From Octopus bimaculoides (Eukaryota), in contig NC_068990.1 of the NCBI RefSeq assembly GCF_001194135.2, positions 56,465,324 to 56,524,628 on the forward strand: DNA of 59,305 nt, written 5' to 3'. Positions 2,289-2,624 of this stretch are shown in pieces (the first letter of the stretch is position 1; every line of letters starts with the position of its first letter). The position numbers were made by a program, and so were the translations under genes. Below the pieces are notes generated by a model. The model did not search any database and was not told the origin of the DNA. It was given only the letters and a program-made list of their open reading frames with translations.

Positions 2289-2624
2289 GGCATATGGCGT
2301 AGTGGTTAAGAGCGCAGGCTACTAACCCCAAGATTTCGAGTTCGATTCCAGGCAGTGACCTGAATAATAATAATAATCATAATAATAATAATAATAATAA
2401 TAATCATAANNNNNNNNNNTGACCTGAATAATAATAATAATCATAATAATAATAATAATAATAATAATCATAATAATAATAATAATAATAACATCGAAAA
2501 ATACCTTAGTAATGAGAACCCAGGTTCGAAGTTTCTCCAAGGCACCTGAAGAAGGCTGGAGGGTATATCAGCCGAAACGTTGTGTTAAGATCAAACAAGA
2601 TGAGATCAAATGTAAATAATGTAA
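2289..2624 (+). mobile_element. Family D SINE-like element, plus arm (tRNA-like head, (AAT)n linker, hammerhead module, 3'-truncated)
   Basis: A box TGGCGTAGTGG 2295-2305; B box GTTCGATTCC 2340-2349; (AAT)n about 2363-2491; hammerhead 2541-2586. Confidence 0.9.
2541..2586 (+). ncRNA. Type I minimal hammerhead ribozyme motif, core intact; predicted cleavage after U2581
   Basis: GGCAC CUGAAGA A GGCUG gaggguauau CAGCC GAAAC GUU GUGUU. Stem I GGCAC/GUGUU, stem II GGCUG/CAGCC, palindromic AACGUU stem III. Confidence 0.75.

What the first reader, a model, noticed from the sequence alone, without database searches (positions are those of the whole stretch)
2289..2624. tRNA-headed SINE carrying a minimal hammerhead ribozyme (candidate SINE/retrozyme hybrid)
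Seen: a Pol III A box and B box head, an (AAT)n linker, then GGCAC-CUGAAGA-A-GGCUG-loop-CAGCC-GAAAC-GUU-GUGUU. The motif occurs five times (2174-2219-, 2541-2586+, 16728-16773-, 17147-17192+, 58777-58822-), and two copies have an intact core. The sense strand has no run of 4 or more T before the end. The element ends at a fixed ...ATATAGAACTG(TA) with no poly(A) or simple-repeat tail. Established: Penelope-like elements and retrozymes carry minimal type I hammerheads with palindromic stem III that cleave as dimers, and an extra A between A9 and G10.1 is known in a viroid hammerhead. Inference: this is a Pol III-transcribed, self-cleaving non-autonomous retroelement mobilised by a Penelope-like RT/GIY-YIG rather than a LINE. 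I do not know whether this combination has been described.
Basis: partly seen in the sequence, partly recalled or inferred. Interest (0 to 1): 0.9.

Follow-up and report, generated by a model that had tools for sequence, protein, structure and literature searches.

The report
Octopus SINE with Penelope-type hammerhead
This is a short octopus retroposon with a tRNA-like RNA polymerase III promoter head and a 3' part carrying the minimal hammerhead ribozyme motif typical of Penelope-like retrotransposons; its insertions look Penelope-made, and similar ribozyme-bearing SINEs are already known from blood flukes.

Summary
A minimal type I hammerhead (HHR) motif occurs five times at the stated coordinates. 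Two copies (2541-2586+, 17147-17192+) pass a full descriptor that found nothing in 300 random windows. The head has an exact A box and a near-exact B box, and the sense strand has no T4 run. The gap at 2410-2419 is an unmerged contig overlap (54/54 identical bases on both sides), so the element is very probably continuous.

New here:
- The genome is an Octopus.
- The five copies form three insertions, each an inverted head-to-head pair.
- At locus 1 the whole pair (2075-2624) is flanked by one 11-12 bp target duplication.
- One arm of that pair lacks the last 32 nt.
- The HHR has a short helix I, an unpaired base before stem II and a palindromic ACGU stem III.

These are published hallmarks of Penelope-like elements (PLEs), so PLE mobilisation is the best reading (about 0.6).

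Not shown: self-cleavage, Pol III transcription and the autonomous partner, because no further octopus DNA could be reached. The element is not a retrozyme, since no tandem copies are present. SINE-like, HHR-bearing retroposons (Schistosoma Sm-alpha and Sj-alpha) have been known since 1998. I class it as a new member of a known kind, of moderate interest.

The parts
2064..2074 (.). Left target-site duplication of locus 1 (ATATATTTTAG; the next base, T, is also shared)
   Evidence: Identical 11-12 nt at 2064-2074 and 2625-2635 flank the whole inverted pair.
2075..2285 (-). Copy A. It has the complete 3' module ending ...ATATAGAACTGTA at 2075 and an HHR at 2174-2219 with an A.C mismatch at 10.1/11.1. 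Only the first ~13 nt of the head (GGCATATGGCGTA) are joined directly to the end of the linker, which is an internal deletion.
2286..2288 (.). Three bases (CGT) at the centre of the head-to-head palindrome. Both arms reach the predicted 5' end of the element here.
   Evidence: read from the sequence
2289..2365 (+). Head of copy B, with A box 2295-2305 (TGGCGTAGTGG) and B box 2338-2349 ((G)AGTTCGATTCC). It ends in the hairpin-like CAGGCAGTGACCTG.
   Evidence: No tRNA is called by ARAGORN or Rfam.
2366..2489 (+). (AAT)n/(CAT) linker of copy B. It contains the assembly gap 2410-2419 and the duplicated 54 nt (2356-2409 = 2420-2473), an unmerged overlap.
2490..2624 (+). 3' module of copy B. It stops 32 nt before the common end, so it is 'tail-less'.
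2541..2586 (+). Intact minimal type I hammerhead. Helix I is GGCAC/GUGUU, the core is CUGAAGA, an unpaired A follows, helix II is GGCUG/CAGCC, then GAA, and stem III is the ACGU palindrome. The predicted cut lies between U2581 and G2582.
2625..2635 (.). Right target-site duplication of locus 1
16647..16915 (-). Copy C. It has a 5'-truncated head (from about position 21), a linker, and a full 3' module ending at 16647. The HHR at 16728-16773 has a broken helix II (CAATC).
16897..17203 (+). Copy D. It has a 5'-truncated head (from about position 16, overlapping C in a short palindrome), an (AAC)n/(AGC)n linker, and a 3' module that stops in the AC-rich stretch 14 nt after the cut site. The HHR at 17147-17192 is intact.
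58687..58929 (-). Copy E. It begins at the last bases of the head (CCTGAAT), followed by a linker and a full 3' module ending at 58687. The HHR at 58777-58822 has G8->A.
58926..58965 (+). Partner arm of copy E: only the head end CAGGCAGTGACCTGAAT plus (AAT)n. The pair is flanked by AGCA(TA) at 58683-58688 and 58966-58971, and it sits inside a LINE reverse-transcriptase remnant.
43607..43858 (-). Decayed C-terminal GIY-YIG endonuclease fragment of a canonical Penelope-like element. It shows that PLEs live in this genome. It is not the partner: its 3' UTR does not match the SINE.
   Evidence: Pfam PF01541, E 3.7e-4. phmmer gave 408 hits, with the domain at the C-terminus of 620-770 aa proteins that Pfam marks RVT_1 and GIY-YIG. 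No blastn match to the SINE.

Best explanation
This is a non-autonomous octopus retroposon of about 300-380 nt, built from three parts:
- a ~75-nt tRNA-like head with internal Pol III A and B boxes;
- a hypervariable (AAT)n-type linker;
- a ~180-nt 3' module that looks like the 3' untranslated/pLTR end of a Penelope-like element (PLE).

The 3' module consists of ~56 nt, then a 46-nt minimal type I hammerhead, then ~86 nt to a fixed end ...GAACTGTA.

Proposed mechanism (inferred):
1. Pol III transcribes the unit from the head. It can run through because the sense strand has no T4 run.
2. A PLE RT/GIY-YIG protein recognises the PLE-like 3' module in trans.
3. The endonuclease cuts both strands of an AT-rich target, and both ends prime reverse transcription.
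4. The two cDNAs meet head to head, giving a TSD-flanked inverted pair.
5. One arm starts at the outer RT start site, so it carries the 32-nt 'tail'. The other starts at an internal site.

The hammerhead is most likely an inherited part of the PLE recognition/processing module. It could cleave only when two copies pair (double hammerhead through ACGU). It is probably idle in monomeric SINE RNA, where cutting would separate the promoter head from the 3' end.

Shown: the anatomy, the copies, the TSD, the inverted pairs, the match to the motif descriptor, and the presence of PLEs in the genome.
Inferred: Pol III transcription, PLE dependence, and the role of the ribozyme.
For: Motif:
- All core bases and helices I and II are intact in two copies. 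The descriptor found 0 hits in 300 random windows.
- The minimum-energy fold of the 58-nt segment is exactly helix I plus helix II.
- A double-hammerhead dimer is energetically feasible: -21.7 and -22.7 kcal/mol, against -25 and -26 for two monomers.

PLE-type features of the motif, as published (PMC4209133), all seen here:
- helix I of 4-5 bp with an open loop 1;
- an unpaired base at the 5' end of stem II;
- a minimal palindromic stem III;
- dual motifs 100-700 bp apart on opposite strands (here about 370 and 420 bp apart).

Insertion signature:
- All 3 loci are inverted head-to-head pairs.
- At locus 1 the whole pair is flanked by an 11-12 bp TSD, so it was one event.
- One arm of that pair lacks the terminal 32 nt.
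- These match published PLE traits: an 'inverted 5'-truncated copy adjacent at the 5' end' and a '30-40 bp tail at one end only' (PMC8557442). They also match a PLE protein that cleaves and extends both strands and starts RT at two internal sites in an AC-rich region (PMC11167929).
- Copy D's outer end lies in the AC-rich stretch.

Unit nature: the head-linker-body junctions recur at three loci with different flanks.

Head: exact A box, 10/11 B box, and no T4 run.

PLEs in the genome:
- a GIY-YIG fragment lies in the window;
- Penelope families are reported as recently active in O. vulgaris (PMC13282606).

A PLE of unknown host, fetched with a PLE protein profile seeded from relatives of the window's GIY-YIG fragment (L001), is an inverted pair. 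It has a min-HHR in its 3' UTR 44 nt from its end.

No LINE or PLE remnant in the window shares the 3' module.
Against: - No autonomous PLE with a matching 3' end was found, because no octopus DNA beyond the window could be reached.
- Rfam hammerhead models give no hit.
- Fold energy is not better than shuffles (z = -0.36 and -1.57).
- There is no compensatory covariation: 5 copies, 0 double changes.
- The HHR is no better conserved than the 50 nt upstream of it.
- Three of five copies carry disabling changes.
- The head is not recognised as a tRNA.
- No TSD is seen at locus 2, and only 4-6 nt at locus 3.
- The arms of locus 1 differ by 15%. This requires either an old insertion or two different template RNAs.
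- The one-sided 'tail' rests on a single locus.
Confidence: 0.6

Rival explanations
1. This is an ordinary LINE-dependent tRNA-type SINE. Its 3' module comes from an octopus LINE (RTE, CR1, Dong-R4 and others are abundant). The hammerhead-like motif is a relic or a coincidence with no link to PLEs. The inverted pairs arise from template switching or twin priming by a LINE RT.
For: - Octopus genomes are dominated by SINEs and by RTE, CR1 and Dong LINEs (PMC8967140, PMC13282606).
- LINE RT remnants lie in the window.
- Some stringent LINE/SINE pairs lack poly(A) tails (general knowledge).
- The HHR shows no covariation and no Rfam hit.
Against: - The motif is far beyond chance: 0 hits in 300 random windows.
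- It has the specific PLE min-HHR traits.
- Twin priming yields non-overlapping segments of one RNA, not two arms that duplicate 110-190 nt of the same sequence.
- A TSD flanks the whole pair and a 32-nt end piece is on one side only, which are PLE signatures.
- LINE remnants in the window do not share the 3' module.
Confidence: 0.2
2. This is not a Pol III SINE. It is a PLE-derived non-autonomous element or a 5'-truncated PLE end (solo pLTR) that once captured a tRNA-like fragment and a microsatellite. It is transcribed by read-through or from a Pol II/pLTR promoter, and the A and B boxes are inert.
For: - The head is not recognised as a tRNA by ARAGORN or Rfam.
- Only one of five copies has the A box.
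- PLEs insert preferentially into microsatellites, so a PLE end next to an (AAT)n run is expected (PMC8557442).
- Most min-HHRs in animal genomes are reported as single motifs from truncated PLEs.
Against: - The same head-end/linker/body junctions occur at three loci with different flanks.
- Both arms of locus 1 end within a few bases of where a Pol III transcript from this A box would start.
- A box and B box spacing (44 nt) and the lack of T4 runs fit Pol III.
- No PLE coding sequence adjoins any copy.
Confidence: 0.15
3. The inverted pairs are assembly artefacts of a short-read, gap-rich scaffold.
For: - The window has many N gaps next to microsatellites.
- The gap at 2410-2419 is an unmerged overlap.
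- PLE-type structures are known to trouble short-read assemblies (PMC8557442).
Against: - Three loci have three different junction points, each with microhomology.
- A clean 11-12 bp TSD flanks the pair at locus 1.
- The arms differ by 6-15%, so they are not collapsed duplicates.
Confidence: 0.03

Closest known systems
Sm-alpha / Sj-alpha SINE-like retroposons of Schistosoma (Ferbeyre et al. 1998; Laha et al. 2000; summarised in PMC2770079 and PMC6765202)
   Same: Both are short, non-coding, high-copy retroposons. Both have a tRNA-like Pol III promoter region and a type I hammerhead inside the unit. In both, cleavage separates the promoter from part of the unit.
   Different: - Sm-alpha carries a canonical hammerhead that Rfam detects and that has proven cis and trans cleavage. 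It often lies in tandem arrays, and it is tRNA-Gln-like.
- The octopus element has a minimal PLE-type hammerhead with no own stem III and no Rfam hit.
- It occurs as dispersed inverted pairs, with no tandems in the window.
- Its head cannot be assigned to any tRNA, and it comes from a different phylum.
Minimal hammerheads in pLTRs of Penelope-like elements (Cervera & de la Pena 2014, PMC4209133; Lunse et al. 2017)
   Same: - Helix I is 5 bp with no closed loop 1.
- There is an unpaired base at the 5' end of stem II.
- Stem III is reduced to a palindrome, so activity would need a dimer.
- Dual motifs lie a few hundred bp apart on opposite strands.
- The motif sits tens of nt upstream of the element's 3' end, as in L001.
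   Different: - Here the motif is not next to an RT/GIY-YIG ORF. It lies behind a Pol III-type head and a microsatellite linker.
- Helix II is 5-6 bp, against the 7-8 bp reported for Schistosoma PLEs.
Animal non-LTR retrozymes (Cervera & de la Pena 2020, PMC7229834; bioRxiv 10.64898/2026.07.22.740005)
   Same: Both are small (170-400 nt), AT-rich, non-coding elements with a type I hammerhead. Both are proposed to depend on PLEs.
   Different: - Retrozymes are defined by head-to-tail tandem repeats that give circular RNAs after double cleavage. Most invertebrate ones have efficient canonical hammerheads.
- No tandem copies are present here, and no Pol III head is described for retrozymes.
Classical tRNA-derived SINE/LINE pairs sharing a 3' tail (for example octopus OK/OR SINEs, Ohshima & Okada 1994; eel UnaSINE1/UnaL2)
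   Same: The plan is the same: head, body, then a 3' module presumably borrowed from the autonomous partner. TSDs are present and A and B boxes are internal.
   Different: - The borrowed module here looks PLE-derived, not LINE-derived.
- Insertions are inverted pairs with a one-sided 32-nt end piece.
- There is no poly(A) or simple-repeat tail.
- The microsatellite sits in the middle of the unit, not at its end.

Membership tests
Hammerhead ribozyme, type I (minimal PLE variant) | Conserved core C3 U4 G5 A6 N7 G8 A9 ... G12 A13 A14 ... A15.1/U16.1, with H17 at the cut site | tested here: met
   All core bases are present in copies B and D. They are also present in A and C. Copy E has G8->A.
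Hammerhead ribozyme, type I (minimal PLE variant) | Helices I and II flank the core in the right order | tested here: met
   The minimum-energy and centroid folds are exactly helix I (5 bp) plus helix II (5-6 bp). Across the 5 copies, 96% of cells are paired.
Hammerhead ribozyme, type I (minimal PLE variant) | Stem III, or a palindrome that can form it in a dimer | tested here: met
   A15.1-C-G-U16.1 is the ACGU palindrome with no loop. A modelled double hammerhead gives -21.7 and -22.7 kcal/mol. This is feasible but is not the minimum-energy dimer.
Hammerhead ribozyme, type I (minimal PLE variant) | PLE-type traits: short helix I with an open loop 1, and an unpaired base 5' of stem II | tested here: met
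   The sequence was compared with the description in PMC4209133.
Hammerhead ribozyme, type I (minimal PLE variant) | Match to the curated covariance models (Rfam Hammerhead_1 and relatives) | tested here: not met
   No hit at gathering score over the window. No hit at E<=10 over 1900-2900. This is expected, because those models require a stem III.
Hammerhead ribozyme, type I (minimal PLE variant) | Covariation or selective conservation of stems and core | tested here: inconclusive
   No compensatory changes, and two one-sided changes that keep pairing. Changes are 1/55 in the core, 4/110 in the stems and 63/625 in the flanks, but the 50 nt upstream are equally conserved. Only 5 copies were available.
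Hammerhead ribozyme, type I (minimal PLE variant) | [quoted passage not shown] | not testable with these tools
   This needs in vitro transcription of monomer and dimer RNA.
SINE (tRNA-type, Pol III) | Internal A and B boxes at proper spacing | tested here: met
   TGGCGTAGTGG at 2295-2305 is an exact match. AGTTCGATTCC at 2339-2349 matches 10 of 11. The starts are 44 nt apart.
SINE (tRNA-type, Pol III) | Head demonstrably derived from a tRNA | tested here: not met
   ARAGORN finds nothing, even at a 70% threshold. Rfam gives no tRNA hit at E<=10.
SINE (tRNA-type, Pol III) | No Pol III terminator inside the unit | tested here: met
   There is no run of 4 or more T in the sense strand of A, B, D or E. 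The only exception is in the mutated head of copy C.
SINE (tRNA-type, Pol III) | Dispersed copies of one composite unit, with target-site duplications | tested here: met
   There are three loci with different flanks. The TSD is 11-12 bp at locus 1 and 4-6 bp at locus 3. None was seen at locus 2.
SINE (tRNA-type, Pol III) | 3' module shared with an autonomous partner | not testable with these tools
   No octopus repeat library or genome could be reached. Remnants in the window do not match.
PLE-dependent (Penelope-type) insertion | Inverted 5'-truncated copy adjacent at the 5' end, or partial tandems | tested here: met
   All 3 loci are head-to-head inverted pairs. The criterion is taken from PMC8557442.
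PLE-dependent (Penelope-type) insertion | Optional 30-40 bp 'tail' at one end only | tested here: inconclusive
   At locus 1, arm A has the terminal 32 nt and arm B lacks them, next to the TSD. This is one locus only. The other two pairs are truncated elsewhere.
PLE-dependent (Penelope-type) insertion | PLEs present in the same genome | tested here: met
   A GIY-YIG fragment lies at 43607-43858. Active Penelope families are reported in O. vulgaris (PMC13282606).
PLE-dependent (Penelope-type) insertion | Sequence identity of the 3' module to a PLE pLTR | not testable with these tools
   No octopus PLE sequence was obtainable. The PLE remnant in the window does not match.
Animal non-LTR retrozyme | Head-to-tail tandem repeats, each with a hammerhead | tested here: not met
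   Same-strand copies are 14.6 kb apart. There is no direct tandem.
Animal non-LTR retrozyme | Circular RNA of unit length | not testable with these tools
   This needs RNA data.

The most novel reading that the evidence does not exclude
This is the first documented Pol III-driven, tRNA-box SINE family that parasitises Penelope-like elements. Its natural ~180-nt RNA module (hammerhead plus ~86 nt) would then be sufficient for a PLE RT/GIY-YIG protein to act in trans. It would also link classical SINEs, the Schistosoma hammerhead SINEs and animal retrozymes as one continuum of PLE dependants. It may be one of the abundant unclassified octopus SINE families.
Probability: 0.4. Interest if true: 0.65.

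Novelty: new member of a known kind. Interest (0 to 1): 0.5.

Why it matters
- PLE retrotransposition is poorly understood, and what the PLE protein recognises in its RNA is unknown.
- If this SINE is PLE-dependent, it supplies a short natural substrate. That substrate defines the minimal cis requirements and allows a direct test of whether the hammerhead is needed.
- It would help to classify part of the very large 'unclassified SINE' fraction of octopus genomes.
- It would support the idea that the long-known hammerhead-bearing SINEs of flukes are also PLE dependants.
- If it instead proves to be LINE-dependent, the motif is a curiosity of one repeat family.

Tried and rejected
- Rfam scans gave no hammerhead and no tRNA hit, both at gathering score over the whole window and at E<=10 over 1900-2900.
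- ARAGORN found nothing in the head, at the default or down to a 70% threshold.
- My first fixed-length pattern had the wrong spacing and found nothing.
- Exact-pattern scans for more copies found none.
- Translating the SINE and searching proteins gave only two hits, both Octopus bimaculoides. This identified the genus. One hit is not on record as a gene and the other gene is too long to fetch.
- Two ORFs from the window are not on record.
- The GIY-YIG fragment found no word-sharing homologue in the indexed search.
- The exhaustive search found 408 relatives. A profile of full-length ones returned 1995 PLE proteins, of which the 120 best were listed; none of those is labelled octopus. The partner therefore remains unidentified.
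- Fold energy against shuffles is not significant.
- Covariation counting is uninformative with 5 near-identical copies.
- Rejected: twin priming by a LINE, because the arms duplicate the same sequence. Rejected: retrozyme, because there are no tandems. Rejected: assembly artefact, because a TSD flanks the pair and the arms have diverged.
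Full report
**1. The observation**

- The head carries an exact A box (TGGCGTAGTGG, 2295-2305) and a near-exact B box ((G)AGTTCGATTCC, 2338-2349).
- An (AAT)n linker follows.
- The 3' part contains GGCAC-CTGAAGA-A-GGCTG-GAGGGTATAT-CAGCC-GAAAC-GTT-GTGTT at 2541-2586.

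The 18-mer CAGCCGAAACGTTGTGTT occurs five times at the stated places, against 0.01 expected. CTGANGA...GAAAC occurs in four of the copies. The fifth, at 58777-58822, has CTGATAA.

I wrote a stricter minimal-hammerhead descriptor: 5-bp helix I, CUGANGA, 0-1 bulged base, at least 4 bp of helix II ending at GAAA, U16.1, non-G17, then the helix I partner. It hits only 2541-2586(+) and 17147-17192(+). It hits nothing in 300 Markov-1 random windows of the same size.

The other three copies each carry one disabling change:
- G10.1->A in the copy at 2174-.
- CAGCC->CAATC in the copy at 16728-.
- G8->A in the copy at 58777-.

**2. The assembly gap**

The 54 bases before the gap (2356-2409) are identical, 54 of 54, to the 54 bases after it (2420-2473). 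This is the signature of two contig ends that overlap but were not merged. The head, the linker and the 3' part are therefore most probably one continuous element, and the linker is about 64 nt shorter than drawn. A real tandem duplication inside the microsatellite cannot be excluded, but it would not change the reading.

**3. What the copies are**

An alignment defines a 3' module of about 180 nt. It runs from AACATCGAAAAATACC to ATATAGAACTGTA. The hammerhead starts about 56 nt into it, and the predicted cut site lies about 86 nt before the end.

blastn of head and body against the window finds only these five copies.

They are not five independent insertions. They form three loci, and each locus is an inverted head-to-head pair:
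- 2075-2285(-) with 2289-2624(+).
- 16647-16915(-) with 16897-17203(+).
- 58687-58929(-) with 58926-58965(+).

In each pair the minus-strand arm reaches the common 3' end. The plus-strand arm stops earlier: 32 nt short at locus 1, in the AC-rich stretch 14 nt after the cut site at locus 2, and inside the linker at locus 3.

The junction between the arms differs from pair to pair, and each shows short microhomology:
- at the very 5' end of the head at locus 1;
- within the head at locus 2;
- at the head's last bases at locus 3.

At locus 1 the whole pair is flanked by an 11-12 bp direct repeat, ATATATTTTAG(T), at 2064-2074 and 2625-2635. The pair therefore entered the genome in one event. Locus 3 has AGCA(TA) on both sides. 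Locus 2 shows no clear duplication.

The same head-end/linker/body junctions at three loci with different flanks show that the composite moves as one unit.

**4. Which genome**

The open frame across the 3' module, used as a protein query, found only two proteins:
- an Octopus bimaculoides 'uncharacterized protein' that is a translated copy (87% identity);
- a predicted O. bimaculoides dystrobrevin-beta isoform whose N-terminus is a translated copy.

The window is therefore from an Octopus. This fits its microsatellite and SINE richness.

**5. How the hammerhead compares with known ones**

Every core base is present, and the cut would follow U17 (2581). The minimum-energy and centroid folds of the 58-nt segment are exactly helix I plus helix II with an open junction. 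The energy is not better than that of shuffled sequences (z = -0.36 and -1.57).

Stem III is only the palindrome ACGU, so the motif would need a second copy. A domain-swapped double hammerhead scores -21.7 and -22.7 kcal/mol, against -25 and -26 for two separate monomers and -29 for the best dimer. It is possible but not favoured.

Rfam's hammerhead models do not match. That is expected, since they require a stem III.

Cervera and de la Pena (PMC4209133) describe the minimal hammerheads of Penelope-like elements as having:
[quoted passage not shown] - a minimal palindromic stem III;
- frequent occurrence as two motifs 100-700 bp apart on opposite strands.

All four hold here.

With only five close copies there is no covariation: 96% of cells are paired and there are no double changes. 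Core and stems changed less than the module as a whole (1/55 and 4/110, against 63/625). However, the 50 nt upstream of the motif are just as conserved. Selective constraint on the ribozyme is therefore not demonstrated.

**6. Evidence for a Penelope-like partner**

Craig et al. (PMC8557442) list the hallmarks of PLE insertions:
- strong 5' truncation;
- partial tandems;
- a 30-40 bp 'tail' present at only one end;
- a bias for microsatellites.

Frangieh et al. (PMC11167929) showed the following for a purified PLE protein:
- It cleaves and extends both DNA strands, unlike R2 or L1.
- It starts reverse transcription at two internal sites in an AC-rich region, and the stretch between them is the 'tail'.
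- It prefers AT-rich targets.
- It does not need hammerhead cleavage in vitro.

The window matches these points:
- three of three head-to-head pairs;
- one TSD around the whole pair;
- a 32-nt end piece on one arm only;
- one arm starting in the AC-rich stretch;
- an AT-rich target.

L1-type twin priming does not fit, because the two arms duplicate 110-190 nt of the same sequence instead of splitting one RNA.

PLEs are present in this genome:
- 43607-43858(-) encodes a decayed GIY-YIG domain (Pfam E 3.7e-4).
- Its relatives carry the domain at the C-terminus of 620-770 aa proteins. Pfam marks these with reverse transcriptase (RVT_1) and GIY-YIG domains.
- Penelope families are reported as recently active in O. 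vulgaris (PMC13282606).

One PLE fetched from an unknown invertebrate (L001) illustrates the same layout:
- a near-perfect inverted pair;
- a minimal hammerhead about 95 nt after the stop codon, with an ACGCGU palindrome;
- a 3' end 44 nt after the cut;
- insertion in a (TA)n run.

**7. What could not be done**

The decisive test is finding an octopus PLE (or LINE) whose 3' end matches the module. It was not possible, because no octopus DNA beyond the window could be reached:
- scans of viral and metagenome contigs found nothing;
- gene look-ups failed;
- the protein searches returned PLEs with no octopus label.

The PLE and LINE remnants in the window do not share the module, but that is a small sample.

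**8. The head**

The A and B boxes, their 44-nt spacing and the absence of T4 runs in the sense strand fit Pol III transcription. In addition, both arms of locus 1 end within a few bases of where such a transcript would begin.

A tRNA origin is not shown. ARAGORN finds nothing, even at a 70% threshold, and Rfam's tRNA model gives no hit. 'tRNA-like promoter head' is the defensible wording.

**9. Most likely mechanism**

Pol III makes a head-linker-module RNA. A PLE protein recognises the PLE-like 3' module and copies it at a staggered double-strand cut, priming from both strands. This yields the inverted pair with variable internal start sites.

The hammerhead is probably carried along as part of the module. 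In a monomeric SINE RNA it lacks a stem III, and cutting would detach the promoter head from the 3' end, so strong self-cleavage would be harmful to the SINE. These steps are inference.

A plausible origin, also speculative, is that a PLE 3' end landed in the (AAT)n tail of a small tRNA-type SINE. This would fit the PLE bias for microsatellites.

**10. Comparison with what is known, and novelty**

SINE-like, Pol III-type, tRNA-related retroposons that carry hammerheads are long known from Schistosoma (Sm-alpha and Sj-alpha; PMC2770079, PMC6765202). Animal retrozymes are small hammerhead elements thought to depend on PLEs (PMC7229834; bioRxiv 10.64898/2026.07.22.740005).

The octopus element fails the defining retrozyme feature, which is tandem repeats. 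It differs from Sm-alpha in three ways:
- it has the minimal PLE-type motif;
- it occurs as dispersed inverted pairs;
- it belongs to a different phylum.

I found no paper describing a hammerhead in an octopus SINE, or a SINE mobilised by a PLE. That library does not include Repbase or Dfam.

I file it as a new member of a known kind. The insertion-signature evidence for a SINE-PLE partnership is the part worth following up.

**Scores**

| Item | Value |
|---|---|
| Interest | 0.5 |
| Confidence in PLE mobilisation | about 0.6 |

Noticed in passing
window 43365-43932: A decayed Penelope-like GIY-YIG fragment (43607-43858, minus strand) and its 3' UTR are bracketed by ~77-nt inverted arms (43365-43441 and 43857-43932, 85-90% complementary). 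The arm next to the ORF looks like upstream PLE sequence. This is another complex PLE-type structure. I saw no hammerhead in its 3' UTR.
   Followed up: partly
window 58963-59304 (+) and 19897-21874 (-): There are LINE reverse-transcriptase remnants (Pfam RVT_1, E 3e-12 and 4e-9). SINE locus 3 is inserted directly upstream of, or into, the one at the end of the window. Neither shares the SINE's 3' module.
   Followed up: partly
window 16287-16371, 25333, 30399, 30794, 45921, 46126, 53184, 53356, 56147: A different and more abundant SINE-like family has 9 copies. They start TTTACGTTCTGAGTTCAAATTCCGCCGAGGTCGAC..., with a B-box-like GAGTTCAAATTCC. It is probably one of the classical octopus tRNA-type SINEs.
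   Followed up: no
window 2516-2530 and equivalents in all copies: The 3' module contains a second B-box-like string (CCCAGGTTCGAAATTTC) about 20 nt upstream of the hammerhead. It is as conserved as the hammerhead itself. It may be a relic of a second tRNA-like unit or part of the recognition module.
   Followed up: no
protein P0002 (Octopus bimaculoides dystrobrevin beta isoform X1): The N-terminal ~30 residues of this predicted isoform are a translated sense copy of the SINE 3' module, including the hammerhead region. It is either an exonised copy or an annotation artefact.
   Followed up: no
window 54796-55249 and 57419-57996: A large inverted repeat (274 nt and 180 nt arms, 96% complementary, about 2.2-2.8 kb apart) is interrupted by long N gaps. 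ORFs across it show a repeated QSRGTGNDL.../QSGGTGNGHAQ pattern.
   Followed up: no
window 40430-41011 (-): Tc1/mariner-like transposase remnant (by eye: ...NSSDLNPLDYYMWG...). It gave no Pfam hit at E<=0.01 for the 56-aa piece tested.
   Followed up: partly
window 10829-11112 vs 42447-42727 and other 'repeats': The top-ranked inverted repeats of the window are runs of N matched to runs of N, next to (TA)n/(CA)n. They are artefacts of the gaps and not real repeats. Most gaps in the window sit inside microsatellites.
   Followed up: partly
L001 351-5341 (ENA ERZ25068219, unknown invertebrate): Two full PLE ORFs lie head to head (arms 99-100% identical, 222 nt between them). Each has a minimal hammerhead about 95 nt after the stop codon (CTGAAGA-GCCGC-AACA-GCGGT-GAA-ACGCGT-A). 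Each ends 44 nt later, and at the right-hand end, the one read, the element abuts a (TA)n run.
   Followed up: partly
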